DNA from: Macrostomum lignano
Lineage: Eukaryota
Assembly (NCBI GenBank): GCA_002269645.1
Contig: NIVC01004978.1
Coordinates: 1 to 29,701 of the forward strand
Direction of reading: 5' to 3'
Length of the DNA stretch: 29,701 nucleotides
Shown: positions 945 through 29,467 of the stretch, piece by piece
How positions within the stretch are numbered: position 1 is the first letter of the stretch
Layout: the number at the start of each line of letters is the position of its first letter
Notes under the pieces: model-generated
Databases searched by the model: none
Told to the model about the DNA's origin: nothing
Seen by the model: only the letters and a program-made list of their open reading frames with translations
Program-made: the position numbers and the translations under genes

Positions 945-3900
945 TGATGTGTGCGCGGTAGCCTTGGTCAGGTTGCCAGGGATGTGATGGGTGTTGCGTC
1001 ACTCCGTCCACATTAGCCATTCAGCTGTGACGTCTAAGGCGCAGTCCCCGTTACGAACCGAGTTTTTCAGAGTCGGATTGGCAGACCACCTCACCTTCCT
1101 CTCTTTTCAACGGGCTTGCGCCCGGATTTGGCGAAATTGCGGCTATATATTGAAGGCTGTGCCGTCGTCTCATTAGCGTTAAAGTAGAGAGAACTGCCAA
1201 TAGAATGCACCAGAAACCACAAGTAGAACCAAAATCAGCCTCATCCTTTTAGGATTGGGACTTGTTGTTCTTCCGCAGCCGACTGGGCAGCCGCATGCAT
1301 CCAGCTGAGCACAGGTTGGCTCGAGTCTCCGCATCTGTTTCCGGCCGCATCGGGAAGCTGATCAGAGCCGAAAGCTGCTCACTGCAATCCGTGAAGCTCA
1401 CCAGCCCGAGTACTCACCATCAATGGTAAGATTGACAGCTCTGAGTGAACCACAGGAGACTGAGGAGTTCGTACTCTGGACGGTATGGTTTCTGGAATCC
1501 AAATGTCAAGAGTTGTGAAATTTGATTTAATAAGCCAGCCTATTGTTCTGACAGCAGATAAACTGCTATTCTCAAGTTCAAGAAACTCACAGCTTATCAG
1601 CATCCTCGAACTCAGCTATTTTGCAGTCTTCTGCCCCGCAGTTCAGGTAGAAGACCTTCTTGGTCCTGTGCTCATAGAACAGTCCGATGCGAAGCCTCTG
1701 TGCGAGATTCAGCGGCTCCTTGCTGCGGGTGCTCAGGCCGGAGCCGACGCGAGTTCGCTGGCCTGAAGCCGGTGTTCAAGTGGAGTGAAATTGTGCAAGA
1801 GTTAAGCTGTGCTGCCTACAGCTAAAACTGATGTGCATTTATTGCTTAACAATGATATTGTTCATGTTAGTCCTCACTACTGCGAGTAAGATTAGCTCAT
1901 GAGAGTAGCCATGCGATATTTTATGGCAGATCCTGCCTCTACTGTGTTTAATTTTCACTAGTCTAAAAAGCCACCGGTTCACTCCAGCTTACTCTCTGTA
2001 ACGAAGTTCTTCAGAGTCGTGGAGCTGTTGAAGCTGGCGAGCCTCATGACTCCGCTGTCAGCCCTCATCGCAGCCGCCAGCTCAGCAGTCAGGTTCCGAC
2101 GAACCGATCCTTTGGTGTAGCAGTTGCTCTCAAAATTAGTCATGCTTCTGCGCAGAATCCGGCTCCATCAGCCGAATATGTAGACCCGGAATATTCACTG
2201 AGCTTCTCCGATTCAGCCGGAATGAGACAGTCAGGAGCTCCTACAGTTTGATGTAATGTATTGTGATTGAATTTTAAGTAAGAAATTGATTTAATAAAAT
2301 TGTGTCCAGCATCGGGCCAGCTCTATCGTACCCTTTCGTCAGTTGCAGCACGCGAAGCATCTCCAGCTCCACGGGCTTTGGCTCGCTTGTTGAAGGCGAC
2401 GAGCAAGTCGCTGGAAATGCATTGGGGTTCGCATTGCCAGGGTAAGAATCGAAGTGTTTGACTGGTTTTATCGAGTTCCAGCTGGCAGTAGCAGCGTGGG
2501 TAAAAACCCACTGACTGCTTGTTCACAGATGCCATTCGACAACTGCTTACTTTAATAATAATAATATAATAATTGATTACACCTGCCCAATGGGCAGATG
2601 TGCAACCGACAGCTCAGCCGCAGCTATTGCGCGGCGCGTCTGAAGCTGCGTACGGCTGTTCAGTCCAAAGACTGCGGTTCGACACACACCCTCACTTATC
2701 CCAGCTAATGCTGGCACCCATTTTACAGCTGGGTGAACTGAAGCAATGCAGAGTAAAGTGTCTTGCTCAAGGACACAAATTGTTCCAGTGGGATCGGGAA
2801 TCGAAACTGCGACCTTCACGTTGTGCGTCCGACGCTCTAACCACTAGGCTACAACCCTAGACCATTACAACTGCCTTGAGTCAGCTATACTAGGCATTTA
2901 TGCAAAGGCGTGAAGTTTGATTTCATAATCACTATTATTATCAACTCTCTTTTCGTTGGCGACCAGACGGCTAAAATTGATGCTCTAAAGGCCTGCTGTC
3001 TTCTTCAACAATTAACATTATTGCACAGCTTATAGAATATTCTCTAATTGTGATCAAAGCGCTGCTTACCGTCCGAAGCCTTCGAGTGCAGTTCGTATCG
3101 CATCGGTTGTTGCTGTGCAGCTGAATCCACAGATTTTGTCCGCCTCCACTCGTTTACGCGAGCCTCCGTGTCAAAGCCAGTCAGAACCACAACGGAATTG
3201 TCAAGGTGGTCAGTCAGAATCTTCCATTTGCAGTTGAGCCCTTCCTCAGGCACAGGGTCCGCGTCAGCTTTGGGAATGATTCGATCTTCAATGAACTCGA
3301 GTTTTTTGCTGAGCTGGAACTCATTGGTGTTGCCACGCGGATAGCAGTACTGGTTGCCTGCCAGAGCTCTAAAGAAAAAAGGGCGGGAAAGTAGATTTAT
3401 TGTAAATGGACACTCAAAAGTTACTGGAAGGCCCACTTAAGATTTGGTCTACTAAAAACGTTATTTTCTGAGCTATTATTGGCAAAATGTGTTGTTGATT
3501 ATATGATTAATTGACTTTTCGGTCGGTACTTCAGTTATTTCTCCCATACCGACCTGTAAAAAGAAAACGTTTTATATTTTAATAATGTATAGAATGTATA
3601 GTAATATATTATTATCATTAGCTATGCTCTATACGCATGTACGTGTAGAAATGCCATCGATTTTGGGGCAACATTCTAGCGGAATTCAATACGATAAAAT
3701 GGGTGAGTATCTACTTACCATCCTACTGATAAGTAGAAAGACAAGAAAATATCGCGTGTAGAACAAGTTCTGTTTATCCAGCTACAGCACTATGATATAA
3801 TCCAATTAACTTTCGTACATTAATGTACATTGACAGCGCAAGCCTCGCAAGGACAGGTCCCCAAAGAACAATCCCACAGCGGGCAGCCCCACAAAGGACA

Positions 3901-4094
3901 GCCCCAATTAGTATGGCGCCCCCAGAGTAGCATCCCAAAACATTCTGCCTACCTTTAAGCAAATGTTAATCCGCAAAAAAATCCCAGTTGGTTTAATGAA
4001 TGAAGCGTCGCATCACTCACATTTGAAATGTGGCAGACAGCAGCAGAAGAGTCGCCAGGCTTCTGCCCATCACTATCTGCAGATTCAGTCGCAT
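945..4094 (-). pseudogene. Paralog A: SP-CUB-like-CTLD-like-TM receptor, frameshifted as assembled (pseudogene or consensus errors)
   Basis: Exons (minus): 4021-4094, 3070-3368, 2332-2410, 1993-2240, 1591-1762, ~945-1491, all with GT-AG ends. Exons 1-3 and 5 are open and nearly identical to paralog C. Exon 4 has three 1-bp deletions relative to C, and the first gives an immediate TGA (G AGC TCC TGA). Exon 6 has several more 1-bp deletions and a 7-bp deletion next to the TM. The position homologous to the C stop (945-947) reads TCA. Confidence 0.8.
2553..2857 (-). mobile_element. tRNA-derived CORE-type SINE in intron 2 of paralog A
   Basis: Minus strand shows box A TAGCCTAGTGG and box B GTTTCGATTCC. 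The segment GTGTCCTTGAGCAAGACACTTTAC...CTTCAGTTCACCCAGCTGTAAAATGGG resembles the MIR/CORE domain, followed by a (TTA)n-like tail. An imperfect flanking direct repeat CCATT(CG)ACAACTGC lies at 2532-2546 and 2862-2874. Absent from intron 2 of B and D. Confidence 0.85.
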
Positions 4095-4169
4095 GTCGGA
4101 CGCTTCCGGCACCTAAAAATCCCGATGTGAGGTGGACGCTGCATGCAGGAGATTCTGTGTCCGCTCAGC

Positions 4170-4196
4170 ATTTATAGGTAAAGACGTGAAACTGCC
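4170..4196 (-). promoter_or_regulatory. Putative core promoter of A: TATA box CCTATAAAT plus conserved GGCAGTTTCA motif
   Basis: TATAAAT lies 76 nt upstream of the ATG. Both motifs recur with nearly the same spacing in the otherwise diverged upstream region of B. Confidence 0.55.
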
Positions 4197-4716
4197 GAAC
4201 AAGCTGGATATTCGTAGATGCCATCAAAACTTCTTGTACACGTACGAGCGTACTTCTAATCACTTCTAATCGCTTAGCAATCCGATTTCTGTTTTAGTAC
4301 CCGGATGTAGTGACAGTTAACTTGGCTTTTTGTTAACCCAACCCTGAGACCAAGGAATTTCACATGCAATAAGCGTCTTGATTTGACTTTTTATTTGATT
4401 TTAAATATAATATTGCATCTGGTGAGACAGGCTCAGTCTTTGCTCTGACTTACATGAGCAAAATTACATTCTAGTGACTCTAATGAACCCCTGTAGCTAT
4501 GATACTACATGCAAAGAAAGTAATCAGGTACGTTGAATTCAAAAATAATTTTGCAACAGAAGTACAATACACACAGCCCCTAAGGACTCGAGAACGGGAA
4601 TGCCTGTTAATCGAACGATGGTAGAAAATTCTGCGGTAACAAAAAATATTTTGTTTAACATTCTTAACCATTTTTGCTTCCTTCTATCTGATCTTTCCTT
4701 AAACAAATCTCATTTG

Positions 4717-6712
4717 ACAAAAAAGGACTCTTAACATTGCCATCAAATTATGCTCAAATTTCTTAAAAATTATGGCAACTAAGTGTGCACGAAACTAAAC
4801 TCACTGTCCATGTGGACTCACACTCACCAAGAGATGTTGGCCAACTCCAACTTCTTGCAGACTTTATAAGAGAAAATTTAGGAGGGGAGCACCGTGGAAA
4901 ACCCATGATTTTATAGGCCAAGCCGCGGTAACTCTCAGGAAGATCCAAGTGAAACCCACGGCTTATCCGCGGTGAATTTTCTCTAAAGCAGCGAGTTTTC
5001 CCTCCTTTCAAGTACAACTAAAAGGCAATTCCATGTCTCTCCATGGATAGTCAGTAGAATTGTTAAAGTAGGGTTGAATTATAGGAGTGCAGGTGTATGC
5101 GTGCGCACAGTTGCCGCCCTGTACCATACTATTGTACGTAGCATGCGAGGAAAGAGAAGCAGAGGACGCACGCTCGATCTGTATCGTGCATGCGCTTTCA
5201 GACCAAGCGTGCACTGTTCATTATATGCCGCATAATGTCAGTGCTGTGCAAAAAAGGGGACTTTAGTTTACCGAGAACTTGGAGTTCTTTATTTTTTGTT
5301 CTTTCTAAAGGTGTGAAATAAAAAAATTACATGCATACAGATCCCACAAATAGTTCGTAAACAATAATAGCCTGCCGTTCAGCTCAAAGCAGTCAACTGC
5401 AGGGAATAAAATAAAAATTACAAGCAAGTGACATTGGGTCTGGCGGATGTCCTTATTGTCGAAGTTAAGAGACTAAAATTTTCTTTATGGGTTCTATCGG
5501 GATTCACAAGGTTTTTCAAAATGTATTTATGATTTCTTCTTTTAGTTTATTTCAACAACGAGCAGTGCGAGCTAAAAGTACTGTGGTGCAGAAACAGCTT
5601 GAGTATTAGTTTCATAGCTCTCATTTAGTCTTTTTTGGTGGAAAACTTTAGCTAGAACTTTAGGATATGTTCCACATTATCTCGATTCTGCATTCCCCAG
5701 ATTTTAGCTCGTACATTCCCCCAGATTTTACGTTCCCGCAGCTTTCACATTCCTAAGATTTGCATCTCCCAGATTTCACATTCCTTAAATTTTACATTCC
5801 TCCAATTCTACATTTCTTAGATTTCACTTTCTCCAACTTTTACATTCCACGAATTTTGCACCCCCAGCTTTCACATTTCGCAGATTTTGCTTTTCTCCAT
5901 GTTTCACATTCCCAGATTTTGCATTCCTCCATATTTTACATTCCTAAGATTTCAAATTCCTAAGATTTCAAATTCCTATGATTTCAAATTCCTAAGATTT
6001 CAAATTCCTAAGATTTTACATTCCACAGATCTTACATTCCCCAAATTACACATTCCCAGATTTCCCGGCGTCGCAAGGAAACAACAAGATACGCTGTCAG
6101 AGTCCTTTGACGGTAGCAGCACAAGTCGCAAAGAAAAGCCACGTCGCCGATTGAATCCGGGGCGCCGGCGTCAGACAGCAGGCTGGAGACAAGGCGCGAA
6201 CCCGCGATACGTGCATGGGACAGCTTGATTTTGCCAGCCGCTCTCACCCCATGTACGCAAGGCGAACCCCAGAGCTATTTTTAGCAACACATCTGTATAG
6301 TGCCATTTGAATGTGAAAGTGCAAGAGGATTCTCTGGTCTGTGTTGAACGCTCTTTAATTTTTAAACGTTTGCGTTATTAACAAGTTTTTTCTGTTATCT
6401 TCTGCTTGCATGGCAGAAAGACTTTCAAACACTCTGGCCTGTAAAGGCTCTATTATGAGTGAGGCCCAAATCTCAGAATTCGCAGCACAGAATATTCAAA
6501 GCAGGGTATTTGATAGTCAACAGGAACGCATAGGCACAATGCAAAAATGCATAGTTTGAGTGTAGCGTTACAGCTCAACGAAGTTTCTCTCTGTGCCCTG
6601 CCCTCAACGCATTTTGTTGGGAGTCTTCTGTGTCACGCGTTCGCAGGCTGCTGGCTGCTGCAGCCTCTAATCTCGGAAACAGTTATTAAAAAAATAAACA
6701 ATGCTGAAAATT
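4717..6712. repeat. ~2 kb upstream block shared by all three spacers (homologs 15113-16891 and ~22621-24620)
   Basis: Begins acaaaaaa(a)ggactcttaaca in each copy and stays collinear with the B-upstream copy through the minisatellite. It is moderately diverged in the B spacer. It is either part of the ancestral duplication unit or an unclassified non-autonomous element. Confidence 0.8.
5688..6063. repeat. 16-bp minisatellite, consensus ATTTCACATTCCYMAG, roughly 23 degenerate units
   Basis: Visible periodicity, including a homogeneous run of atttcaaattcctaag at ~5949-6012. Confidence 0.9.
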
Positions 6713-8049
6713 AAACGGAATGAAATGAAATTTCATTGCCATGTGCATGCTATATGCGCTAGTAAATTTATTACATTTTTGATGGGTTTCGACCTTTGGG
6801 CTCCTTGTTAGGGAAGCCTTCGGGCCTCAGGCTCAGAAATAAATCAATTAGAGCCCTGGCCCCCCACTCCTGTCAGATGGTCAGCCCCATGGTAGCTTGA
6901 TCGTGTGGCGAGCAGTCTTGGTCCTATAGCTAAGAGAGGGACAGCGAGAGACAAGCAGGGAGAATTTTGAAGGTAGAAATTAGTTAATCCGCAGATTAGC
7001 TAACTCGCTGCCACCAGCCCGTACGTCCTGGCTCACCACACCGGGACTCTCGAAATCGGGCTTCCGACTAGAAGGGGCTTTGCACTTACCTTGCAACTAG
7101 TGTCTTTTTGCTGTCAATCTCGAAGTCATAGCCGATGATAAGGGACACTGCTGGGACTAGATCGCATTGGCCATGCAGGTACAGAGGGGACTTGTGCAGG
7201 GGATTCTTGCAGTGGCGAGTCTATGGGGTAGCTACATGTACTATTACATTGCTAAATACGAAGATATGTACTTTTGGCCTTCAACGCGCCAACTAGCCTA
7301 TCATAGCGCTGATGATAGGCTAACTCGAACTTCAGAGACCTCGCATGATTCATTTACCCGAGCCGCTTGGCTACCCTAGAGTGCACAAAGTACATCTCTG
7401 GCGCCGATTCTGCACTTCTGGCAGTTTTGCTCACTGATTTGATAGATTGGTCGACTGAGAACCGCCTTGCCATTGGTCCACTGTGACCGGCGCCTACTAG
7501 CTTAGCTACTCATCTGAGCCATCGGCGAACAAAGAAATAAAGCCGATAAAAATAACTGTTAGATTTAACCTTCTCCTTAGATCACTTCACACCTCAGATT
7601 GAATTGGAGTTTTAGACTACTAGCAGTATTATTGAATGATTTCTGCCTCAGCAACAGCACTTATTGAACAAAATGAGCAAAAGTGTGCGCCTAATTCAGC
7701 TACTGAAAAAGGGGACAGATAAGGGATCACCCAATCAAGCAAGTCTAGGTAGCCTCTCACCCAACCAATCAGAAACTCAACAGCCGGAGACCAGGTAATC
7801 CACAGTGACCGAATCGGCTTGATGCTCTGCAGCTGTAGACTCGGGATGATGCTGTCACAATCTTCGCTGTTAGCTAGCAGGTGATGCTCTTCACTTGATG
7901 TTCGCTGCTGATGACCGGGGGACTCGTCCTTGATGATGATGGGGGGGAAGTCGCAATCCGGGGATCAAGAAACGACGGTCAGGCTCCGGGAGGTCTCAAG
8001 CTAGGCCAAGGTCCCAGGAGGTTGAGGTCCGAGCGGGCCAAAAACACCG

Positions 8050-8185
8050 GTTTAAATAGCCGCCAACTGGACCGCAGTTTGTTATAATGGAACACGTTGA
8101 TTCTGATTGGCTGAGCCGTTTTGTTAAAATGAGCGCCGAATTTTCTGATTGGCTAAGCTTGTTGCTACCCATAATCACGTGACCG
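8050..8185 (-). promoter_or_regulatory. Promoter-like cluster (two AGCCAATCAG NF-Y-type boxes, CACGTG E-box, TATTTAAA) in an unidentified spacer insert; duplicated at ~25957-26092
   Basis: ttctgattggct occurs twice (~8101 and ~8142), tcacgtgac at ~8175 and tttaaatag at ~8051. The layout resembles an LTR U3 or a Pol II promoter, but no LTR termini or TSD could be confirmed. Confidence 0.4.
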
Positions 8186-9378
8186 AGAGATCCTATCAGT
8201 TCCCACAGGGTCGTAAAAAGATGACAGATGCGGCCATAAATCAATCAAAATCGCAACAAAATGATTTATGACTTTTCGCGTAGGATTGACAGAAATTGAT
8301 GAAAAAATATACATTAGCAAGCTCTTATTAAATAGAAAGTGAAGATAATGAAGAGAAATTGCTAATCGCTAATCCCAAGGTACTTTTAGGGGTAAAACGC
8401 ATAGCTGTCAAAGCTGTCACACGCTTGAGTGAACACGAACAATAGGCTCTGACCTCATAAATCTTGATGGCCTGTCAAAATGATGAGAAAAAAGCTACCG
8501 CCCGCATCCTCTCAGACCATCTGGCACCCGCCTAAACACTGAGTGAGGCGCAGGTGGCTGTCAGACCAGCTTCGAAAGCGATGATTTATGACCCAAAAAG
8601 CTGCGCCTATGTTATTATGACTACTAGTATGACCAAACATTATATCTAGTATAGATTCTATGACAATTAACAAAAAAGGATAAAATGCCCACTGCCCACT
8701 GTTAGTAGGCTGGTAAAGTTAGAGCCCATGTGCTAGCGCGGGATTTGGATTCATCATTTTCATGACAAAACGTAAATTTCGCAAAAGGGTTACAGTTAAA
8801 ATGGTTAGATTAGTAGGTACAATAATTTTGTTAAAATAATTTTGCAGGCTTTGAATTTACCTACTAATACTATTAATACCCAAAATTGTCCATGCGCTCG
8901 TTTTTTCACCACTGTTTAATTCAGCAACAAACCAAGCAGTCAATCCTTATTGCACACATCTTTCGCGTTAGTGCAGTGAAAACATCAAAAGATGTGTGGA
9001 TGGATAAGGTAAAGTAGTAAATGAATTATAAACAAATGAAATATTTATAATATTTACAGCGATTACCGCATTTATAAAGCAGAAAAATTGTTGCATATTA
9101 GTGACAGCATAAGTGTACAGTGATCACTCGCATATAACAGCTAGCGAACTTCTCACTCAATCCTCGTAGTTCATTCTTAGTAAAGCTGCTAACACTTAGT
9201 TAACACCAGCAACAAAATCATAAAATATTGTCTGTTGAATCTTCAAACCAGTCATTACCGGATGCGTCCGATGAGAAGTGAAGCTGGATTTCGAGCAAAC
9301 AGACTCCATAACTATTAATGATTTTGTCTCTTTTGCAAGCGCGGATATTGGCTGATCAAAGCGAGATGATTGGCGTGA

Positions 9379-13042: not shown

Positions 13043-13119
13043 GTCGCTCACTTCCGGCACCTAAAAATCCCGATTAGGGTTAGATGCAGTATGTAGAGTC
13101 TGTTTCTTTCTGCATCAGG

Positions 13120-13144
13120 ATTTATAGGGAGGCTTGAAACTGCC
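13120..13144 (-). promoter_or_regulatory. Putative core promoter of B (CCTATAAAT; GGCAGTTTCA)
   Basis: 78 nt upstream of the B ATG; conserved with A and C amid divergent flanks. Confidence 0.55.
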
Positions 13145-13706
13145 CATAAGAAATTTGCATTAAAATCAAAGTACTTGTACGTGAGGTATATTAGTACTCG
13201 TATTTATTAATTGGACTAAATTTCCAAGATTTTTGTGTAATGCATTGCACCAACTGTAAAATTCGCTGGGTGGGGTCACCTACCTAACTATGGTCCCCCC
13301 AATCATAAGTACATGAATACATGTACTACTAACTTTTGCACTCTGATTTATGTCCTCATATCGAATGTAGGGACAATTACATGACTCTAGTCCAGTTTTA
13401 AACTCCAGGAACTCTAGCTGCAAGCAATAAAGTACGTATGGATTTTTTATCAGTATGAAATTTTTGGATTGTGAAAGAGGGAACAAAAATTTTAATTGGG
13501 GTCAGACAAAAAGCGCCAGTTCAATTGCTTGGAATAAGTTGTTGGGCTGAGCCACGCGGTAGCCCCGCTAGGCACCCCCTTTTAACAACAAAAATTTTTG
13601 ACTAAATTTTGCAGAGGCTAAAAACTTCTTTTGTACGTTCGTAATACGCTTAATTTTAATTTCGATCTAGCGAAATTTTAACCTTATGAAGTCTCTTGCT
13701 AGAGTT

Positions 13707-14017: not shown

Positions 14018-14082
14018 CTTAAGCTTTCAATGTTCTAAAATTTCAACCCTGTAAAGTTTCGACCTATAGTGAGATAATTTAC

Positions 14083-18820: not shown

Positions 18821-21800
18821 TTATGTGTGCGCTGTAGCCTTGGTCAGGTTGCCAGGGATGGGTGCTGCAGGGTGTTGCGTCACCCCATCCACATTAGGCC
18901 ATTCAGCTGTGACGTCTAAGGCGCAGTCCCCATTGCGAACGAGAGGTTTTTCAGAGTCGGATTGGCAAACCGCCTCAAACCTTCCTTCATTTTCAACCGG
19001 GCTTGGGACCGGATTTGGCGAAATTGCTGCTGTATATTGAAGGCTGTGCCGTCGTCTCCTATAAATTAGCGTTAAAGTAGAGAGAACTGCCAATATAATC
19101 GCACCAGAAACCACAAGTAGAACCAAAATCAGCCTCATCCTTTTAGGATTGGGACTTGTCTGTTCTTCCGCAGCCGACTGGGCAGCCGCATGCATCCAGC
19201 TGAGCACAGGTTGGCTCGAGTCTCCGCATCTGTTTCCGGCCGCATCCGGGAAGCTGATCAGAGCCGAAAGCTGCTCACTGCAATCCGTGAAGCTCACCAG
19301 CCCGAGTACGTCACCATCAATGGTAAGATTGACAGCTCTGAGTGAACCACAGGAGACTGAGGAGTTCGTACTCTGGACGGTATGGTTTCTGGAATCCAAA
19401 TGTCAAGAGTTGTGAAATTTGATTTAATAAGCCAGCCTATTGTTCTGACAGCAGATAAACTGCTATTCTCAAGTTCAAGAAACTCACAGCTTATCAGCAT
19501 CCTCGAACTCAGCTATTTTGCAGTCTTCTGCCCCGCAGTTCAGGTAGAAGACCTTCTTGGTCCTGTGCTCATAGAACAGTCCGATGCGAAGCCTCTGTGC
19601 GAGATTCAGCGGCTCCTTGCTGCGGGTGCTCAGGCCGGAGCCGACGCGAGTTCGCTGGCCTGAAGCCGGTGTTCAAGGAGAGTGAAATTGTGCAAGAGTT
19701 AAGCTGTGCTGCCTAAAGCTAAAACTGATGTGCATTTATTGCTTAACAATGATATTGTTCATGTTAGTCCTCACTACTGCGAGTAAGATTAGCTCATGAG
19801 AGTAGCCATGCGATATTTTATGGCAGATCCTGCCTCTACTGTGTTTAATTTTCACTAGTCTAAAAAGCCACCGGTTCACTCCAGCTTACTCTCTGTAACG
19901 AAGTTCTTCAGAGTCGTGGAGCTGTTGAAGCTGGCGAGCCTCATGACTCCGCTGTCAGCGCTCATCGCAGCCGCCAGCTCAGCAGTCAGGTTCCGACGAA
20001 CCGATCCTTTGGTGTAGCAGTTGCTCTCAAAATTAGTCATGCTTCTGCAGCAGAATCCCGGCTCCATCAGCCGAATATGTAGACCCGGAATATTCACTGA
20101 GCTTCTCCGATTCAGCCGGAATGAGACAGTCAGGTAGCTCCTACAGTTTGATGTAATGTATTGTGATTGAATTTTAAGTAAGAAATTGATTTAATAAAAT
20201 TGTGTCCAGCATCGGGGCAGCTCTATCGTACCCTTTCGTCAGTTGCAGCACGCGAAGCATCTCCAGCTCCACGGGCTTTGGCTCGCTTGTTGAAGGCGAC
20301 GAGCAAGTCGCTGGAAATGCATTGGGGTTCGCATTGCCAGGGTAAGAATCGAAGTGTTTGACTGGTTTTATCGAGTTCCAGCTGGCAGTCAGCAGCGTGG
20401 GTAAAAACCCACTGACTGCTTGTTCACAGATGCCATTCGACAACTGCTTACTTTAATAATAATAATATAATAATTGATTACACCTGCCCAATGGGCAGAT
20501 GTGCAACCGACAGCTCAGCCGCAGCTATTGCGCGGCGCGTCTGAAGTCTGCGTACGGCTGTTCAGTCCAAAGACTGCGGGGTCGACACACACCCTCACTT
20601 ATCCCAGCTAATGCTGGCACCCATTTTACAGCTGGGTGAACTGAAGCAATGCAGAGTAAAGTGTCTTGCTCAAGGACACAAATTGTTCCAGTGGGATCGG
20701 GAATCGAAACTGCGACCTTCACGTTGTGCGTCCGACGCTCTAACCACTAGGCTACAACCCCTAGACCATTACAACTGCCTTGAGTCAGCTATACTAGGCA
20801 TTTATGCAAAGGCGTGAAGTTTGATTTCATAATCACTATTTATCAACTCTCTTCGTTGGCGACCAGACGGCTAAAATTGATGCTCTAAAGGCCTGCTGTC
20901 TTCTTCAACAATTAACATTATTGCACAGCTTATAGAATATTCTCTAATTGTGATCAAAGCGCTGCTTACCGTCCGAAGCCTTCGAGTGCAGTTCGTATCG
21001 CATCGGTTGTTGCTGTGCAGCTGAATCCACAGATTTTGTCCGCCTCCACTCGTTTACGCAAGCCTCCGTGTCAAAGCCAGTCAGAACCACAACGGAATTG
21101 TCAAGGTGGTCAGTCAGAATCTTCCATTTGCAGTTGAGCCCTTCTTCAGGCACAGGGTCCGCGTCAGCTTTGGGAATGATTCGATCTTCAATGAACTCGA
21201 GTTTTTTGCTGAGCTGGAACTCATTGGTGTTGCCACGCGGATAGCAGTACTGGTTGCCTGCCAGAGCTCTAAAGAAAAAAGGGCGGGAAAGTAGATTTAT
21301 TGTAAATGGACACTCAAAAGTTACTGGAAGGCCCACTTAAGATTTGGTCTACTAAAAACGTTATTTTCTGAGCTATTATTGGCAAAATGTGTTGTTGATT
21401 ATATGATTAATTGGCTTTTCGGTCGGTACTTCAGTTATTTCTCCCATACCGACCTGTAAAAAGAAAACGTTTTATATTTTAATAATGTATAGAATGTATA
21501 GTAATATATTATTATCATTAGCTATGCTCTATACGCATGTACGTGTAGAAATGCCATCCATCGATTTTGGGGCAACATTCTAGCGGAATTCAATACGATA
21601 AAATGGGTGAGTATCTACTTACCATCCTACTGATAAGTAGAAAGACAAGAAAATATCGCGTGTAGAACAAGTTCTGTTTATCCAGCTACAGCACTATGAT
21701 ATAATCCAATTAACTTTCGTACATTAATGTACATTGACAGCGCAAGCCTCGCAAGGACAGGTCCCCAAAGAACAATCCCACAGCGGGCAGCCCCACAAAG

Positions 21801-21998
21801 GACAGCCCCAATTAGTATGGCGCCCCCAGAGTAGCATCCCAAAACATTCTGCCTACCTTTAAGCAAATGTTAATCCGCAAAAAAATCCCAGTTGGTTTAA
21901 TGAATGAAGCGTCGCATCACTCACATTTGAAATGTGGCAGACAGCAGCAGAAGAGTCGCCAGGCTTCTGCCCATCACTATCTGCAGATTCAGTCGCAT
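18821..21998 (-). CDS. Paralog C: type-I membrane protein with signal peptide, CUB-like domain, CTLD-like domain, TM and 79-aa tail (480 aa, 6 exons)
   Basis: Exons (minus): 21925-21998 (MRLNLQIVMGRSLATLLLLSATFQ), 20970-21268, 20232-20310, 19890-20140, 19488-19659, 18821-19388. Total 1443 nt, fully open, intron phases 2-1-2-1-2, canonical donors and acceptors. TM LILVLLVVSGAIILAVLSTLTLIY is followed by stop-transfer RRRRH. Confidence 0.88.
20454..20760 (-). mobile_element. tRNA-derived CORE-type SINE in intron 2 of paralog C (duplicate of the copy in A)
   Basis: Nearly identical to 2553-2857 and at the same intron position. Confidence 0.85.
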
Positions 21999-22073
21999 GT
22001 CGGACGCTTCCGGCACCTAAAAATCCCGATGTGAGGTGGACGCTGCATGCAGGAGATTCTGTGTCCGCTCAGC

Positions 22074-22100
22074 ATTTATAGGTAAAGACGTGAAACTGCC
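22074..22100 (-). promoter_or_regulatory. Putative core promoter of C
   Basis: Identical to the A promoter. Confidence 0.55.
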
Positions 22101-23595
22101 GAACAAGCTGGATATTCGTAGATGCCATCAAAACTTCTTGTACACGTACGAGCGTACTTCTAATCACTTCTAATCGCTTAGCAATCCGATTTCTGTTTTA
22201 GTACCCGGATGTAGTGACAGTTAACTTGGCTTTTTGTTAACCCAACCCTGAGACCAAGGAATTTCACATGCAATAAGCGTCTTGATTTGACTTTTTATTT
22301 GATTTTAAATATAATATTGCATCTGGTGAGACAGGCTCAGTCTTTGCTCTGACTTACATGAGCAAAATTACATTCTAGTGACTCTAATGAACCCCTGTAG
22401 CTATGATACTACATGCAAAGAAAGTAATCAGGTACGTTGAATTCAAAAATAATTTTGCAACAGAAGTACAATACACACAGCCCCTAAGGACTCGAGAACG
22501 GGAATGCCTGTTAATCGAACGATGGTAGAAAATTCTGCGGTAACAAAAAATATTTTGTTTAACATTCTTAACCATTTTTGCTTCCTTCTATCTGATCTTT
22601 CCTTAAACAAATCTCATTTGACAAAAAAGGACTCTTAACATTGCCATCAAATTATGCTCAAATTTCTTAAAAATTATGGCAACTAAGTGTGCACGAAACT
22701 AAACTCACTGTCCATGTGGACTCACACTCACCAAGAGATGTTGGCCAACTCCAACTTCTTGCAGACTTTATAAGAGAAAATTTAGGAGGGGAGCACCGTG
22801 GAAAACCCATGATTTTATAGGCCAAGCCGCGGTAACTCTCAGGAAGATCCAAGTGAAACCCACGGCTTATCCGCGGTGAATTTTCTCTAAAGCAGCGAGT
22901 TTTCCCTCCTTTCAAGTACAACTAAAAGGCAATTCCATGTCTCTCCCATGGATAGTCAGTAGAATTGTTAAAGTAGAGGGTTGAATTATAGGAGTGCAGG
23001 TGTATGCGTGCGCACAGTTGCCGCCCTGTACCATACTATTGTACGTAGCATGCGAGGAAAGAGAAGCAGAGGACGCACGCTCGATCTGTATCGTGCATGC
23101 GCTTTCAGACCAAGCGTGCACTGTTCATTATATGCCGCATAATGTCAGTGCTGTGCAAAAAAGGGGACTTTAGTTTACCGAGAACTTGGAGTTCTTTATT
23201 TTTTGTTCTTTCTAAAGGTGGTGAAATAAAAAAATTACATGCATACAGATCCCACAAATAGTTCGTAAATAATAATAGCCTGCCGTTCAGCTCAAAGCAG
23301 TCAACTGCAGGGAATAAAATAAAAATTACAAGCAAGTGACATTGGGTCTGGCGGATGTCCTTATTGTCGAAGTTAAGAGACTAAAATTTTCTTTATGGGT
23401 TCTATCGGGATTCACAAGGTTTTTCAAAATGTATTTATGATTTCTTCTTTTAGTTTATTTCAACAACGAGCAGTGCGAGCTAAAAGTACTGTGGTGCAGA
23501 AACAGCTTGAGTATTAGTTTCATAGCTCTCATTTAGTCTTTTTTGGTGGAAAACTTTAGCTAGAACTTTAGGATATGTTCCACATTATCTCGATT

Positions 23596-23971
23596 CTGCA
23601 TTCCCCAGATTTTAGCTCGTACATTCCCCCAGATTTTACGTTCCCGCAGCTTTCACATTCCTAAGATTTGCATCTCCCAGATTTCACATTCCTTAAATTT
23701 TACATTCCTCCAATTCTACATTTCTTAGATTTCACTTTCTCCAACTTTTACATTCCACGAATTTTGCACCCCCAGCTTTCACATTTCGCAGATTTTGCTT
23801 TTCTCCATGTTTCACATTCCCAGATTTTGCATTCCTCCATATTTTACATTCCTAAGATTTCAAATTCCTAAGATTTCAAATTCCTATGATTTCAAATTCC
23901 TAAGATTTCAAATTCCTAAGATTTTACATTCCACAGATCTTACATTCCCCAAATTATACATTCCCAGATTT
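23596..23971. repeat. 16-bp minisatellite upstream of C
   Basis: Duplicate of 5688-6063. Confidence 0.9.
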
Positions 23972-26900
23972 CCCGGCGTCGCAAGGAAACAACAAGATAC
24001 GCTGTCAGAGTCCTTTGACGGTAGCAGCACAAGTCGCAAAGAAAAGCCACGTCGCCGATTGAATCCGGGGCGCCGGCGTCAGACAGCAGGCTGGAGACAA
24101 GGCGCGAACCCGCGATACGTGCATGGGACAGCTTGATTTTGCCAGCCGCTCTCACCCCATGTACGCAAGGCGAACCCCAGAGCTATTTTTAGCAACACAT
24201 CTGTATAGTGCCATTTGAATGTGAAAGTGCAAGAGGATTCTCTGGTCTGTGTTGAACGCTCTTTAATTTTTAAACGTTTGCGTTATTAACAAGTTTTTTC
24301 TGTTATCTTCTGCTTGCATGGCAGAAAGACTTTCAAACACTCTGGCCTGTAAAGGCTCTATTATGAGTGAGGCCCAAATCTCAGAATTCGCAGCACAGAA
24401 TATTCAAAGCAGGGTATTTGATAGTCAACAGGAACGCATAGGCACAATGCAAAAATGCATAGTTTGAGTGTAGCGTTACAGCTCAACGAAGTTTCTCTCT
24501 GTGCCCTGCCCTCAACGCATTTTGTTGGGAGTCTTCTGTGTCACGCGTTCGCAGGCTGCTGGCTGCTGCAGCCTCTAATCTCGGAAACAGTTATTAAAAA
24601 AATAAACAATGCTGAAAATGAAACGGAATGAAATGAAATTTCATTGCCATGTGCATGCTATATGCGCTAGTAAATTTATTACATTTTTGATGGGTTTCGA
24701 CCTTTGGGCTCCTTGTTAGGGAAGCCTTCGGGCCTCAGGCTCAGAAATAAATCAATTAGAGCCCTGGCCCCCCACTCCTGTCAGATGGTCAGCCCCATGG
24801 TAGCTTGATCGTGTGGCGAGCAGTCTTGGTCCTATAGCTAAGAGAGGGACAGCGAGAGACAAGCAGGGAGAATTTTGAAGGTAGAAATTAGTTAATCCGC
24901 AGATTAGCTAACTCGCTGCCACCAGCCCGTACGTCCTGGCTCACCACACCGGGACTCTCGAAATCGGGCTTCCGACTAGAAGGGGCTTTGCACTTACCTT
25001 GCAACTAGTGTCTTTTTGCTGTCAATCTCGAAGTCATAGCCGATGATAAGGGACACTGCTGGGACTAGATCGCATTGGCCATGCAGGTACAGGGGGACTT
25101 GTGCAGGGGATTCTTGCAGTGGCGAGTCTATGGGGTAGCTACATGTACTATTACATTGCTAAATACGAAGATATGTACTTTTGGCCTTCAACGCGCCAAC
25201 TAGCCTATCATAGCGCTGATGATAGGCTAACTCGAACTTCAGAGACCTCGCATGATTCATTTACCCGAGCCGCTTGGCTACCCTAGAGTGCACAAAGTAC
25301 ATCTCTGGCGCCGATTCTGCACTTCTGGCAGTTTTGCTCACTGATTTGATAGATTGGTCGACTGAGAACCGCCTTGCCATTGGTCCACTGTGACCGGCGC
25401 CTACTAGCTTAGCTACTCATCTGAGCCATCGGCGAACAAAGAAATAAAGCCGATAAAAATAACTGTTAGTTTTAACCTTCTCCTTAGATCACTTCACACC
25501 TCAGATTGAATTGGAGTTTTAGACTACTAGCAGTATTATTGAATGATTTCTGCCTCAGCAACAGCACTTATTGAACAAAATGAGCAAAAGTGTGCGCCTA
25601 ATTCAGCTACTGAAAAAGGGGACAGATAAGGGATCACCCAATCAAGCAAGTCTAGGTAGCCTCTCACCCAACCAATCAGAAACTCAACAGCCGGAGACCA
25701 GGTAATCCACAGTGACCGAATCGGCTTGATGCTCTGCAGCTGTAGACTCGGGATGATGCTGTCACAATCTTCGCTGTTAGCTAGCAGGTGATGCTCTTCA
25801 CTTGATGTTCGCTGCTGATGACCGGGGGACTCGTCCTTGATGATGATGGGGGGGAAGTCGCAATCCGGGGATCAAGAAACGACGGTCAGGCTCCGGGAGG
25901 TCTCAAGCTAGGCCAAGGTCCCAGGAGGTTGAGGTCCGAGCGGGCCAAAAACACCGGTTTAAATAGCCGCCAACTGGACCGCAGTTTGTTATAATGGAAC
26001 ACGTTGATTCTGATTGGCTGAGCCGTTTTGTTAAAATGAGCGCCGAATTTTCTGATTGGCTAAGCTTGTTGCTACCCATAATCACGTGACCGAGAGATCC
26101 TATCAGTTCCCACAGGGTCGTAAAAAGATGACAGATGCGGCCATAAATCAATCAAAATCGCAACAAAATGATTTATGACTTTTCGCGTAGGATTGACAGA
26201 AATTGATGAAAAAATATACATTAGCAAGCTCTTATTAAATAGAAAGTGAAGATAATGAAGAGAAATTGCTAATCGCTAATCCCAAGGTACTTTTAGGGTA
26301 AAACGCATAGCTGTCAAAGCTGTCACACGCTTGAGTGAACACGAACAATAGGCTCTGACCTCATAAATCTTGATGGCCTGTCAAAATGATGAGAAAAAAG
26401 CTACCGCCCGCATCCTCTCAGACCATCTGGCACCCGCCTAAACACTGAGTGAGGCGCAGGTGGCTGTCAGACCAGCTTCGAAAGCGATGATTTATGACCC
26501 AAAAAGCTGCGCCTATGTTATTATGACTACTAGTATGACCAAACATTATATCTAGTATAGATTCTATGACAATTAACAAAAAAGGATAAAATGCCCACTG
26601 CCCACTGTTAGTAGGCTGGTAAAGTTAGAGCCCATGTGCTAGCGCGGGATTTGGATTCATCATTTTCATGACAAAACGTAAATTTCGCAAAAGGGTTACA
26701 GTTAAAATGGTTAGATTAGTAGGTACAATAATTTTGTTAAAATAATTTTGCAGGCTTTGAATTTACCTACTAATACTATTAATACCCAAAATTGTCCATG
26801 CGCTCGTTTTTTCACCACTGTTTAATTCAGCAACAAACCAAGCAGTCAATCCTTATTGCACACATCTTTCGCGTTAGTGCAGTGAAAACATCAGATGTGT

Positions 26901-27387
26901 GGAAGGATAGGGTAAAGTAGTAAATGAATTATAAACAAATGAAATATTTATAATATTTACAGCGATTACAGCATTTATAAAGCAGAAAAATTGTTGCATA
27001 ATAGTGACAGCATAAGTGTACAGTGATCACTCGCATATAACAGCTAGCGAACTTCTCACTCAATCCTCGTAGTTCATTCTTAGTAAAGCTGCTAACACTT
27101 ATTTAACACCAGCAACAAAATCATAAAATATTGTCTGTTGAATCTTCAAACCAGTCATTTACCGGATGCATCCGATGAGGAAGTGAAACTGGATTTCGAG
27201 CAAACAGACTCCATAATTATTAATGATTTTGTCTCTTTTGCAAGCGCGGATATTGGCTGATCAAAGCGAGATGATTGGCGTGACTAAATGAGAGCTGGTA
27301 GGCTTTCAAGCTGTTTTATGTGCGTGCTGTAGCCTTTGTCAGGCTACCAGGGAAAGGTGATGGGTGTTGCGTAACTCCATCCACATT

Positions 27388-29467
27388 TTAGCATTCAGCT
27401 GCGACGTCTAAGGCGCAGAATGAACCAGAGGTTTTTGGGCGTCGGATTGACAGGCCCCTCAGGCCCTCCTCCTTTTCAACGGGGCTTGGGACCGTCTTTG
27501 GCGAAGCTGCTGCTTCACGTTGAAGGCATTGCAGTTGTTTCATAAAAATTAGCGTTAAAGTAGAGAGAAATAACAATAGAATCAAACCAGCAGCCACAAA
27601 TTGAACCATAATCAGCCTCATCCGTTCAGGACTGGGACTTGTTTGCTCTTCTTCCGCAGCCGGCTGGGCAGCCGCAAGCATCCAGTTGAGCACAGGTTGG
27701 CTCCAGTCTCCGCATCTGTTTCTGGCCGCATCCGGGAAGCTGATCAGAGCCGGCAGCTGCTCACTGCAGTCCGTAAAGCTCACCAGCCCGAGTACCTCAC
27801 CATCAATGGTAAGATTGACAGCTCTGAGTGAACCACAGAAGACTGAGGAGTTCGTACTCTGGACGGTATGGTTTCTGGAATCCAAATGTCAAGAGTTGTG
27901 AAATTTGATTTAAGTAGCGAGCCAATTGTTCTGACAGCAGATAAACTGCTATTCTCAAGTTAAGAAACTCACAGCTTATCAGCATCCTCGAACTCAGCCA
28001 TTTTGCAGCCTTCTGCCCCGCAGTTCAGGTAGAAGACCTTCTTGGTCCTGTGCTCATAGAACAGTCCGATGCGAAGCCTCTGTGCGAGATTCAGCGGCTC
28101 CTTGCTGCGGGTGCTCAGGCCGGAGCCGATGCGAGTTCGCCGGCCTGAAGCCGGTGTTCAAGTGGAGTGAAATTGTGCAAGAGTTAAGCTGTGCGGTCTA
28201 CAGCTAAAATTGATGTGCATTTATCGCTAAACAGTGATATTGTTCCTGTTAATTCTTACTACTGCCAGTAGGATAAACTCAACGAGTAGCATTGCGATGC
28301 TTTATTTCTGATTCTATCTTACTGGCTTGAAGTTTTGTTAAGTGTTCAGAAACCAACCGCTTCATTTCAGCTTACTCTCTGTTACGAAGCTCTGCAGAGC
28401 CGCGGAGCTGTTGAAGCTGGCGAGCCTCATGACTCCGCTGTCAGCGCTCATCGCAGCCAGCTCAGCAGTCAGGGACCGACGAACCGATCCTGTGGTGTAG
28501 CAGTTGCTCTCAAAATTAGTCATGTTTCTGTCGCAGAATCCCGGCTCCATCAGGCGAATTTGTAGACCGGGATATTCGCTGAGCTGCTCCGATTCAACCG
28601 AAATGAGACAGTCAGGTAGCTCCTACAGTTTCGTGTAGAGCACAGTGATTAGTTTGGAGTAAGGAAAAGATTTTTTAAAAATAGTTCAGCATCGGGCCAG
28701 CTCTATCGTACCCTTTCGTCAGTTGCAGCACCCACAACATCTCCAATTCAACTGGCTTTGGCTCGCTTGTGGAAGAGCAAGTCGCTGGAAAGTTCAAGTT
28801 TCATTGGGAGTTGACTGCTTTTATCGAGTACCGGCTAGAAGTCTGTATCTGTAGTGTGGCACTAAAACCTACAGACTTCTCGCACACACTTGCCATTAAA
28901 CAAGTACAGACTTCACTACTGCACTATGCATTTATGCGTCGCGTGAAGTTCGTTTTTGTCATCTCTACTATTTGTTTTCAACTTCCTTAAACTGTATAAA
29001 GCCTTCTGTTGGTAATTAACTGAATGAACGTCAATAAACCGCTTTTAGATGTTCTGTTTCTAGCTCGTAGCAAAAGACTAACTGCATGCGAACAGGAAAT
29101 ACAAGTTAGAACTGGACAAAATTAAATATTATAATATATCTGTAATTGTGCTCGAAGCTTGCTCTACTTACAATCCGAATCATTCGAGTGCAGTTGGTAT
29201 CGCATCGGTTGATGTTGTACAGGTGAATCCACAGATCTTTTCCACCTCCGCTTGCTTAGGTACGCCTTCGTGTCAAAGCCAGTCAGAACCACAACGGCTT
29301 TGTCAAGATGGTCAGTCAGAATTTTCCATTTGCAGTTGAGGCCTTCCTCAGGCACGGGCTCTCCGTAAGTTTTAGGTATGATTCGATCCTCAATTAAATC
29401 CAGTTTTAAGCTGAGCTGCAACACAGTGATGCCACGCGGATAGCAGTAATGGTAGCCTGCCTGAGCT
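27388..29467 (-). pseudogene. Paralog D (5'-partial, exon 1 beyond window): same receptor family, with a 1-bp frameshift in exon 4 and a truncated tail as assembled
   Basis: Exons (minus): 29172-29467, 28712-28784, 28376-28622, 27973-28144, 27388-27874. Exon 4 is 247 nt, 1 nt short in a C-run (tgtagaccggg vs tgtagacccgg in C), giving a premature TGA. Exon 6 has two 1-bp C-run deletions relative to B and an in-frame TAA at 27388. It could be an intact gene with sequencing errors. Confidence 0.75.

What the first reader, a model, noticed from the sequence alone, without database searches (positions are those of the whole stretch)
945..29467. Tandem array of diversifying CUB-like + C-type-lectin-like type-I receptors: candidate undescribed recognition (immune/allorecognition) locus
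Seen in sequence: four head-to-tail paralogs, hidden from the ORF track by splicing, share a 6-exon SP-CUB-CTLD-TM-tail design. Sequence variation is concentrated in the membrane-distal domain and the tail, while exon 5 differs by only 0-4 of 172 nt among copies. Established knowledge: clustered, polymorphic single-pass receptors are typical of invertebrate recognition loci (Hydractinia Alr, Botryllus fester, lectin-like receptor clusters). CUB and CTLD modules are used in both immunity and gamete recognition. Inference: this is a lineage-specific receptor family under diversifying selection. I do not recognise it as a named gene, and gamete recognition is an equally open alternative.
Basis: partly seen in the sequence, partly recalled or inferred. 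Interest (0 to 1): 0.85.

Follow-up and report, generated by a model that had tools for sequence, protein, structure and literature searches.

The report
Flatworm tandem array of CUB–lectin-like receptors
The window holds four same-strand copies of an uncharacterised Macrostomum lignano gene for a single-pass membrane protein with a CUB-like and a C-type-lectin-like domain; the array is real and larger than four, but an immune or allorecognition role is not shown.

Summary
Four spliced paralogs lie head to tail on the minus strand: A 4094→~945, B 13042→9379, C 21998→18821, D 29467→27408. D's exon 1 lies just beyond the window. [quoted passage not shown]

The organism is the flatworm Macrostomum lignano. 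The genes are deposited in GenBank as hypothetical proteins, and I found no paper on them. No family member hits Pfam. A family profile hits only CTLDs in the PDB (best E 5e-6). An AlphaFold model (pLDDT 77) matches CUB domains and NK-receptor-type CTLDs by Foldseek. The Ca2+/sugar-binding motifs are absent.

The frameshifts in A and D are assembly errors, because another assembly reads those exons in frame. That assembly shows at least 11 copies over about 130 kb.

Domain-wide diversifying selection is not supported: pN/pS is 0.43 for the CUB-like domain and 0.51 for the CTLD. The 172-nt exon is similar between copies because of homogenisation, since its synonymous sites and flanking introns are also similar. 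The one diversifying signal is a hypervariable basic loop (residues 91-106). Transmembrane and tail segments come in three swapped types.

The function is unknown. This is a lineage-specific expanded CTLD receptor family, a new variant of a known kind.

The parts
945..4094 (-). Gene A, the counterpart of GenBank BOX15_Mlig013553g3 / P0001 (454 aa). Exons (high to low): E1 4094-4021, E2 3368-3070, E3 2410-2332, E4 2240-1993, E5 1762-1591, E6 1491-~945. The 3' end is uncertain.
   Evidence: In this window, 1-nt deletions at 2150, 2158 and 2235 (E4) and at 1205, 1350 and 1412 (E6) break the frame. These deletions are absent from NIVC01000712.1, where the gene is intact.
9379..13042 (-). Gene B, intact, 459 aa. 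Exons: 13042-12969, 12311-12016, 11824-11746, 11664-11417, 10159-9988, 9889-9379 (stop included).
   Evidence: Intron 3 (81 nt) is open in frame in B only, and intron 4 is 1257 nt against 230 nt in the other copies. In the GenBank assembly this copy carries 1-nt deletions at the equivalents of 9485 and 11422, and the locus fetched there lists no gene over it.
18821..21998 (-). Gene C, intact, 480 aa. Exons: 21998-21925, 21268-20970, 20310-20232, 20140-19890, 19659-19488, 19388-18821.
   Evidence: C is 100% identical to GenBank BOX15_Mlig023897g1 (P0003, 367 aa). That model is N-terminally truncated because the GenBank contig has a 1-nt deletion at the equivalent of 21145.
27408..29467 (-). Gene D, lacking exon 1 in the window. 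Exons: E2 29467-29172, E3 28784-28712, E4 28622-28376, E5 28144-27973, E6 27874-27408 (TAG stop).
   Evidence: The 1-nt deletions at 28566, 27472 and 27454 are specific to the window and absent from NIVC01002507.1. Exon 1 was found in L001 at about 816-890, roughly 640 nt beyond the window end. Its start codon is shifted two codons downstream, because the first ATG reads ATA. The partial GenBank model is P0009.
586..9429 (.). First copy of the recent 8.9-kb duplicated block (gene A plus the A-B spacer, up to the 3' end of gene B). Its partner is 18461-27334 at 98.7% identity.
   Evidence: Self-BLAST. A/C differences are 64 substitutions, 27 deletions in A and 8 deletions in C. Between 1500 and 9000 there are only 13 substitutions.
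18461..27334 (.). Second copy of the 8.9-kb duplicated block (gene C plus the C-D spacer).
9988..10159 (-). The 172-nt exon 5 in B, which encodes the middle of the CTLD, including the RIGL ('WIGL') strand. The equivalents are 1591-1762 (A), 19488-19659 (C) and 27973-28144 (D).
   Evidence: The exon differs by 0-6 nt between copies, and intron 5 diverges by only 4-8%. pS is 0.049 and pN is 0.026.
20996..21043 (-). Codons 91-106 of gene C: a hypervariable, basic, disordered loop of the CUB-like domain (TEACVNEWRRTKSVDS in C; TAPHQSKRRWARSVDS in B).
   Evidence: 14 of 16 codons vary non-synonymously and none varies synonymously only. Fisher p is 2.9e-6 against the rest of the ectodomain. pN/pS is 1.6 for residues 92-106 and 2.2 for 91-105. 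pLDDT is below 50 at 96-110.
5713..6064 (.). A 16-nt-period minisatellite (unit ACATTCCTCAGATTTC, about 22 copies) in the A-B spacer. It recurs at 15999-16181 and 23620-23971.
   Evidence: One array lies in each intergenic spacer, so the minisatellite is part of the repeating unit of the gene array.

Best explanation
What it is. The window is a stretch of a large tandem array in Macrostomum lignano, with at least 11 copies. The array encodes a lineage-restricted family of type I single-pass membrane glycoproteins. Each protein has, in order:
- a signal peptide;
- a divergent CUB-like beta-sandwich;
- a divergent CTLD that lacks the Ca2+/sugar-binding motifs and resembles NK-receptor-type CTLDs;
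- a short stalk;
- one transmembrane helix;
- a 50-80-residue cytoplasmic tail.

How the array evolves (shown by sequence comparison). It grows and is kept partly homogeneous by unequal crossing-over and gene conversion. The signs are a recent 8.9-kb duplicate, relationships between copies that change along the gene, and a converted tract around exon 5. The ectodomain is under relaxed purifying selection. One disordered basic loop in the CUB-like domain is hypervariable. The transmembrane and tail segments occur as three types exchanged between copies.

How it most likely works (inferred). The proteins are cell-surface binding receptors. Their ectodomain binds a protein or another non-canonical ligand rather than sugars through Ca2+. 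Different transmembrane/tail types would couple similar ectodomains to different downstream partners. Which biology they serve (defence against microbes, cell adhesion or reproduction) is not resolved by this evidence.
For: - Gene models with canonical splice sites in all copies.
- Organism and annotation status.
- CTLD homology by sequence: profile searches against PDB return 43 and 70 hits, all CTLDs, best E 5.7e-6 and 4.7e-6.
- Structure: AlphaFold with 37 sequences gives pLDDT 77.2 and pTM 0.69, with a helix at 374-409.
- Fold matches: Foldseek hits CUB domains (6gh8_A, 9en2_A, 2wno; TM 0.33-0.57) and CTLDs (2yhf_A TM 0.75, 6e7d, 7odu, 1ypq, 3hup).
- CUB-type sequence features: a C...CxWxI motif, with C71 and W73 invariant across distant members.
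- CTLD-type cysteines: C0/C0' and C2/C3 are kept. The WIGL motif appears as RIGL.
- Topology: hydrophobic peaks at the N-terminus (B only at the >1.6 cut-off) and at 373-389. Five N-glycosylation sequons in each ectodomain, all within the CTLD. No EPN, QPD or WND motif.
- Frameshifts are assembly-specific.
- At least 11 copies.
- Selection measures.
- Mosaicism: in exon 2, B is nearer to A/C (8%) than to D (14%). In exon 6, B is nearer to D (3%) than to A/C (12%).
Against: - No single family member reaches any Pfam CUB or Lectin_C score at E <= 1.
- The N-domain profile finds nothing in PDB sequences at E <= 10. The CUB assignment therefore rests on a predicted structure with modest Foldseek scores (E about 1e-4, TM 0.5-0.6) and one motif.
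- The sequence match to CTLDs covers only the N-terminal third to half of the domain.
- The first AlphaFold run, with 10 sequences, was unusable (pLDDT 35). The good model depends on a 37-sequence alignment from a single species.
- No transcript evidence was available for the splice junctions, the 3' ends or expression.
- The order A-B-C-D depends on a join that GenBank assembly GCA_002269645.1 leaves as two contigs. By their coordinates those contigs should overlap by about 1 kb, of which I could read only 226 nt.
Confidence: 0.75

Rival explanations
1. Immune pattern-recognition receptors. The array would be an expanded, diversifying set of innate-immune sensors, like other invertebrate CTLD expansions. 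The hypervariable loop and copy number would provide binding breadth.
For: - A CTLD plus CUB combination occurs in C. elegans CLEC proteins. [quoted passage not shown]
- Tandem expansion and a hypervariable loop are present here.
Against: - Ectodomain-wide pN/pS is 0.46.
- There is no EPN/QPD/WND carbohydrate site.
- No expression or induction data were found.
- The nematode proteins are secreted and share no detectable specific sequence relationship with this family. No hit outside M. lignano appeared.
Confidence: 0.25
2. Reproductive recognition. The proteins would be sperm, egg or female-tract surface receptors evolving under sexual selection or conflict in an outcrossing hermaphrodite.
For: - Reproduction-related genes evolve rapidly in Macrostomum (titles and abstracts of PMC7336406 and PMC8662610).
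- The family is lineage-restricted and has a fast-evolving loop and tail.
Against: - The gene identifiers are absent from the supplementary tables held for PMC7336406.
- There is no tissue evidence.
- Most of the ectodomain is under purifying selection.
Confidence: 0.15
3. Allorecognition locus, comparable to Hydractinia Alr or Botryllus fester/FuHC.
Against: - M. lignano is solitary and shows no colony fusion or rejection (my own knowledge).
- The known allorecognition receptors are Ig-like or EGF/Sushi proteins, not CUB/CTLD proteins (my own knowledge).
- No allelic polymorphism data exist. Differences between the two assemblies are almost all 1-nt indels, not allelic substitutions.
Confidence: 0.03
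4. Mostly decaying or artefactual copies. On this view only B and C are real genes, A and D are pseudogenes, and the near-identical A and C blocks are an assembly duplication.
For: - A and D are frameshifted in the window.
- A and C are 98.7% identical.
- M. lignano is described as a hidden polyploid in the abstract of PMC10468722.
Against: - Every frameshift in A and D is missing from the other assembly, which has different 1-nt deletions in B and C.
- Differences between assemblies are indel-dominated: 13 of 14 in the C-D half.
- A and C keep consistent, distinct tail sequences in both assemblies.
Confidence: 0.07

Closest known systems
C. elegans CLEC proteins that combine CTLD and CUB domains (for example CLEC-4, CLEC-41, CLEC-42)
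   Same: - The same two domain types occur in one protein.
- The family is large and lineage-expanded. C. elegans has 283-288 clec genes, about half of which carry an extra CTLD or another domain such as CUB (PMC8051790).
   Different: - The nematode proteins are predicted to be secreted and have one to three CTLDs with one or two CUBs. Here there is one CUB-like and one CTLD-like domain on a transmembrane anchor with a cytoplasmic tail.
- No specific sequence relationship was detected.
- The flatworm domains are too divergent for the Pfam models.
Vertebrate NK-gene-complex CTLD receptors (CD69, NKR-P1, LOX-1, CLEC5A, Ly49 / NKG2)
   Same: - These are the best sequence and fold matches for the CTLD.
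- The canonical Ca2+/sugar site is lost.
- The genes are clustered in tandem with gene conversion.
- Similar ectodomains are paired with different transmembrane and tail types, which recalls activating/inhibitory receptor pairs.
   Different: - NK receptors are type II proteins, with an N-terminal tail and a C-terminal CTLD, and have no CUB domain. These proteins are type I.
- The C1-C4 disulfide is missing in most members here.
- I did not recognise an ITIM or ITAM in the tails by eye.
- The resemblance reflects the shared fold and probably convergent genomic dynamics, not orthology.
CUB-domain receptors (neuropilin a1/a2, PCPE-1, TSG-6 CUB_C, Neto2)
   Same: - The predicted fold of residues ~28-178 matches these CUB domains.
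- The first disulfide and the CxWxI motif are conserved.
   Different: - There is a 20-40-residue disordered, basic, hypervariable insertion between strands 83-91 and 114-119.
- The second CUB disulfide is not conserved.
- No sequence-level hit to any CUB was found.
Hydractinia Alr and Botryllus fester / FuHC allorecognition loci
   Same: Clustered single-pass membrane proteins with variable distal regions.
   Different: - The domain families are different.
- Those loci are defined by extreme allelic polymorphism and a fusion/rejection phenotype. Neither can be tested here, and a fusion/rejection phenotype is not expected in a solitary flatworm (my own knowledge).

Membership tests
[quoted passage not shown] | Significant sequence similarity to known CTLDs | tested here: met
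   Family profiles against PDB sequences returned 43 hits (full-length profile) and 70 hits (CTLD-only profile), all of them CTLDs. Best E-values were 5.7e-6 (CD69) and 4.7e-6 (DC-SIGNR). The match covers only the N-terminal ~45-62 residues of the domain. Single sequences do not reach Pfam Lectin_C at E <= 1.
[quoted passage not shown] | CTLD fold: two helices plus two beta-sheets in a double-loop arrangement | tested here: met
   In the AlphaFold model, residues ~180-345 have block pLDDT mostly above 85, with helices 202-211 and 225-235 followed by strands. Foldseek against PDB gives CLEC5A TM 0.75 (rmsd 3.8), NKR-P1B 0.69-0.70, LOX-1 0.56-0.66 and CD69 0.63-0.64. This is a predicted structure, not an experimental one.
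[quoted passage not shown] | Conserved cysteine framework (C1-C4, C2-C3) and WIGL motif | tested here: inconclusive
   The C0/C0' pair (C181, C192) and the C2/C3 pair (C305, C328) are invariant or nearly so. WIGL appears as RIGL or RLGM. C1 is present only in the P0010/P0012 subgroup, and C4 is replaced (LISF). This fits a divergent CTLD, but the canonical framework is incomplete.
Ca2+-dependent carbohydrate-recognition domains (true C-type lectins) | EPN or QPD motif plus WND motif forming Ca2+ site 2 | tested here: not met
   B and C contain no EPN, QPD, EPS, QPN or WND. The WND position reads FTD. The proteins should not be called lectins.
CUB domain | Sequence match to CUB profiles | tested here: not met
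   No Pfam CUB hit at E <= 1 for any of 37 members. The N-domain profile has 0 hits in PDB sequences at E <= 10. UniProt names many members 'CUB domain-containing protein'. Other members receive unrelated automatic names (ZP, PAZ, PilZ, Tub), so these names are weak evidence.
CUB domain | CUB jelly-roll beta-sandwich fold | tested here: met
   The model has nine strands between residues 30 and 175. Foldseek hits are neuropilin-2 CUB1 (6gh8_A, TM 0.57, prob 1.00), TSG-6 CUB_C (2wno, 0.57), neuropilin-1 a1 (4gza_H, 0.52) and PCPE-1 (9en2_A), with E 4e-4 to 2e-3. The scores are moderate and the structure is predicted.
CUB domain | First disulfide with the C-x-W-x-I motif about 25-40 residues after the first Cys | tested here: met
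   C33 ... C71-K-W73-K-I. C71 and W73 are the only invariant columns across distant members. The second CUB disulfide is not conserved.
Type I single-pass membrane receptor | N-terminal signal peptide, one transmembrane helix, positive-inside rule, glycosylation sequons only on the ectodomain | tested here: met
   A hydrophobic segment lies at the N-terminus (helix 2-27 in the model; it passes the Kyte-Doolittle >1.6 cut-off only in B). Kyte-Doolittle peaks are at 373-389, followed by RRRRH (C) or SR (B). There are five NxS/T sequons between residues 183 and 312 and a predicted helix at 374-409. No dedicated signal-peptide predictor was available.
Allorecognition loci (Hydractinia Alr, Botryllus fester / FuHC) | Extreme allelic polymorphism linked to a fusion/rejection phenotype | not testable with these tools
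   No population data are available. The two assemblies differ almost only by 1-nt indels.
Gene family under diversifying (positive) selection | dN/dS > 1 over the recognition domain or at clustered sites | tested here: inconclusive
   By domain, pN/pS is 0.43 (N-domain) and 0.51 (CTLD). For the loop, pN/pS is 1.6 over residues 92-106 and 2.2 over 91-105. In the 91-106 stretch 14 of 16 codons change the amino acid and none changes synonymously only (Fisher p 0.005 against synonymous-only sites elsewhere). The windows are small, the loop is disordered, and recombination among copies confounds the estimate. No codon-model test was run.

The most novel reading that the evidence does not exclude
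The array could encode a paired-receptor system comparable to vertebrate NK-complex receptors but invented independently in a flatworm. Nearly identical CUB-like/CTLD ectodomains, differing mainly in one hypervariable basic loop, would be coupled by cassette exchange to three alternative transmembrane/tail modules with opposite or distinct signalling outputs. Such a system could serve self/non-self, microbe or mate discrimination.
Probability: 0.1. Interest if true: 0.8.

Novelty: new variant of a known kind. Interest (0 to 1): 0.4.

Why it matters
If it holds up, this is an uncharacterised, Pfam-invisible receptor family that has expanded to dozens of genes in a flatworm model with working transgenesis and RNAi, so its function is directly testable. 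It adds a type I, membrane-anchored CUB-like plus CTLD-like architecture to the list of lineage-specific CTLD expansions in invertebrates.

It is also a clean example of concerted evolution in a tandem array, with one hypervariable loop and swapped transmembrane/tail types.

There is a practical lesson for annotation. Single-base consensus errors in long-read assemblies truncate or fuse the gene models here. P0003 and P0009 are truncated, and P0002 spans 19 kb.

It does not, on present evidence, open the question of flatworm immunity or allorecognition.

Tried and rejected
- Pfam on raw ORF pieces, on spliced B and C, and on 37 family members gave no relevant hit.
I used the GenBank counterparts, P0001 and others, instead.
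- AlphaFold with a 10-sequence alignment gave pLDDT 35 and was discarded.
- The N-domain profile against PDB sequences gave nothing.
- I searched for the gene identifiers in full texts and in the supplements of four M. lignano papers. A fifth paper holds no supplement text. Nothing was found, so there is no expression information.
- I tried to identify the organism behind SRA run SRR24204725 and could not.
- Rfam and tRNA scans of the window found nothing.
- ORF scans of the spacers found no convincing further gene. The GenBank annotation also lists only family genes in these loci.
- I considered and rejected pseudogene status for A and D.
- I considered and rejected special purifying constraint as the reason for the conserved 172-nt exon.

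Full report
**What is in the window**

The sequence looks eukaryotic. It has no long ORFs and its G+C content is 38-49%. A self-comparison shows a repeating unit of about 8.4-9.5 kb. Positions 586-9429 match 18461-27334 at 98.7% over 8.9 kb. Weaker matches (77-96%) link four gene-sized blocks.

Reading the minus strand and aligning the four blocks gave one shared gene design with canonical GT-AG introns. The six exons are:
- Exon 1: 74 nt, the signal peptide.
- Exon 2: 296-299 nt.
- Exon 3: 73-79 nt.
- Exon 4: 247-251 nt.
- Exon 5: 172 nt.
- Exon 6: about 510-570 nt, holding the end of the ectodomain, the transmembrane helix and the tail.

Introns 3 and 5 are only 81-99 nt long. Intron 3 is open in frame in copy B alone, and that is how I found it.

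B (459 aa) and C (480 aa) are intact in the window.

**Organism and annotation**

A word-based search placed the genes in Macrostomum lignano.
- C is 100% identical to BOX15_Mlig023897g1, a truncated 367-aa model.
- A corresponds to BOX15_Mlig013553g3 (454 aa).
- D corresponds to the partial model BOX15_Mlig030037g1.

All are 'hypothetical proteins' in GenBank. UniProt's automatic names are often 'CUB domain-containing protein', but other family members carry unrelated names such as ZP, PAZ, PilZ and Tub. I did not treat these names as evidence.

**Comparison with the GenBank assembly**

The window is not a GenBank contig. It joins the end of NIVC01000712.1 (window 1-14095, 99.09% identity) to the start of NIVC01002507.1 (window 13870-29701, 99.89%).

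This comparison settles the frameshifts.
- The 1-nt deletions that break A (exons 4 and 6) and D (exons 4 and 6) in the window are absent from the GenBank contigs.
- The GenBank contigs have their own 1-nt deletions in B (exons 4 and 6) and in C (exon 2).
- In the C-D half, 13 of the 14 differences between the assemblies are indels.

These are long-read consensus errors. All four genes are intact in at least one assembly. D's exon 1 lies about 640 nt beyond the window end.

**Size of the array**

Mapping C's exons onto five fetched loci shows at least 11 same-strand copies over roughly 130 kb. Five lie on contig 712 and six, plus a fragment, on contig 2507.

Other close paralogs sit on three further contigs. 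That fits the hidden polyploidy reported for this species in the abstract of PMC10468722.

The GenBank model P0002 spans 19 kb and looks like a chimera of two neighbouring copies (with the sequences).

**Domain identity**

Pfam is silent for every one of 37 members. An exhaustive profile search of 1.84 billion cluster representatives found 30 clusters. One (P0031) is an unrelated spurious match. The rest that carry names are all M. lignano, and one short unnamed contig comes from SRA run SRR24204725.

That contig encodes a relative with about 50-55% identity and the same exon 4/5/6 layout. A further N-domain follows the CTLD directly, with no transmembrane segment between them.

CTLD evidence:
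- The family profile matches only CTLDs in the PDB. The hits are CD69, DC-SIGNR, DC-SIGN, NKG2A, LOX-1 and others, with best E-values of 5.7e-6 and 4.7e-6, over the first 45-62 residues of the domain.
- With 37 aligned sequences AlphaFold gave pLDDT 77 and pTM 0.69. With 10 sequences it had given pLDDT 35.
- Foldseek on that model returns CTLDs: CLEC5A TM 0.75, NKR-P1B 0.69-0.70, LOX-1 and CD69.

CUB evidence:
- Foldseek also returns CUB domains: neuropilin-2 CUB1 TM 0.57, TSG-6 CUB_C 0.57 and PCPE-1.
- The N-domain keeps the C...CxWxI signature of the first CUB disulfide. It has no sequence-level CUB hit.

The CTLD lacks the EPN/QPD and WND motifs. It also lacks the C1-C4 disulfide in most members.

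Hydropathy, a basic stop-transfer sequence and five ectodomain sequons support a type I membrane topology.

**Evolution of the copies**

I anchored nine array copies to C's codons and computed Nei-Gojobori proportions.

| Region | Mean pN/pS |
|---|---|
| N-domain | 0.43 |
| CTLD | 0.51 |
| Stalk | 0.80 |
| Transmembrane helix | 1.30 |
| Tail | 1.24 |

The 172-nt exon is not under extra constraint. Both pS (0.049) and pN (0.026) are low, with a ratio of 0.53. The similarity extends into the introns on both sides. Intron 5 diverges by 4-8%, and the last ~30 nt of intron 4 are nearly identical between copies. Introns 1-3 diverge by 20-44%.

Relationships between copies also change along the gene. 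B groups with A/C in exon 2 and with D in exon 6. Together these point to gene conversion or unequal exchange.

The one local signal of diversification is residues 91-106.
- 14 of 16 codons vary non-synonymously and none varies synonymously only.
- Fisher p is 2.9e-6 against the rest of the ectodomain.
- pN/pS is 1.6-2.2.

This stretch is a low-confidence loop in the model. It carries a basic R-x-x-R/K-S motif that is kept even in 35%-identical relatives. It may be a fast-evolving linker, a protease site or a binding loop.

Transmembrane and tail sequences fall into three types distributed among the copies. This explains the ratios above 1 for those regions without invoking positive selection.

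**Interpretation**

The architecture and the lineage restriction are supported. 'Diversifying receptor family' is only partly supported. The immune, allorecognition and gamete-recognition readings remain guesses.

I found no expression or polymorphism data. Allorecognition is unlikely in a solitary worm (my own knowledge).

The nearest known kind is the invertebrate lineage-specific CTLD expansion, especially the C. elegans CLEC proteins that combine CTLD and CUB domains (PMC8051790). The CTLD itself most resembles vertebrate NK-complex receptors.

The combination of a membrane anchor, type I orientation and a single CUB-like plus a single CTLD-like domain makes this a new variant of a known kind, not a new kind.

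Noticed in passing
window 5713-6064, 15999-16181, 23620-23971: A minisatellite with a 16-nt period (ACATTCCTCAGATTTC) lies in each intergenic spacer of the array. It has about 22, 11 and 22 copies at 71-76% match.
   Followed up: partly
window 3849-3906, 12752-12782, 21753-21810: A short 15-nt tandem repeat (AAGGACAGCCCCACA, 2-4 copies) sits at the same place in intron 1 of genes A, B and C.
   Followed up: no
window ~20996-21043 (gene C codons 91-106) and equivalents in A, B and D: The hypervariable disordered loop keeps a basic R-x-x-R/K followed by S-(V/A)-(D/E). Examples are RRWKR|SVD and WRRTK|SVD, and RRVVR|SAE in 35%-identical relatives. This fits the minimal furin / proprotein-convertase consensus, so the N-domain might be cleaved.
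   Followed up: no
window 1000-2900 and 27400-28600, compared with L002 and L001: Single-base deletions relative to GenBank assembly GCA_002269645.1 cluster inside genes A and D, while that assembly has its own in B and C. Substitutions are rare, so both assemblies carry residual long-read indel errors that break gene models.
   Followed up: yes
L005 10001-29025 (NIVC01000712.1 460732-479756): GenBank gene model BOX15_Mlig033233g1 (P0002) spans 19 kb. Its sequence has an A/C-type N-terminus and a B/D-type tail, so it looks like a chimera of two neighbouring array copies.
   Followed up: partly
L006 (Logan contig SRR24204725_808221, 1-1895): A relative with about 50-55% identity from an unidentified sequencing run has the same exon 4/5/6 layout. 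After its CTLD it continues straight into another N-domain with no transmembrane segment. This suggests multi-module or secreted family members in another organism.
   Followed up: partly
window 10160-11416 (intron 4 of gene B): Intron 4 is 1257 nt in B but 230-231 nt in A, C and D, an insertion of about 1 kb that I did not characterise.
   Followed up: no
window 12592-13074, plus strand: A 161-codon open frame runs antisense to exon 1 and intron 1 of gene B. It has no homologue that I looked for and is probably spurious.
   Followed up: no
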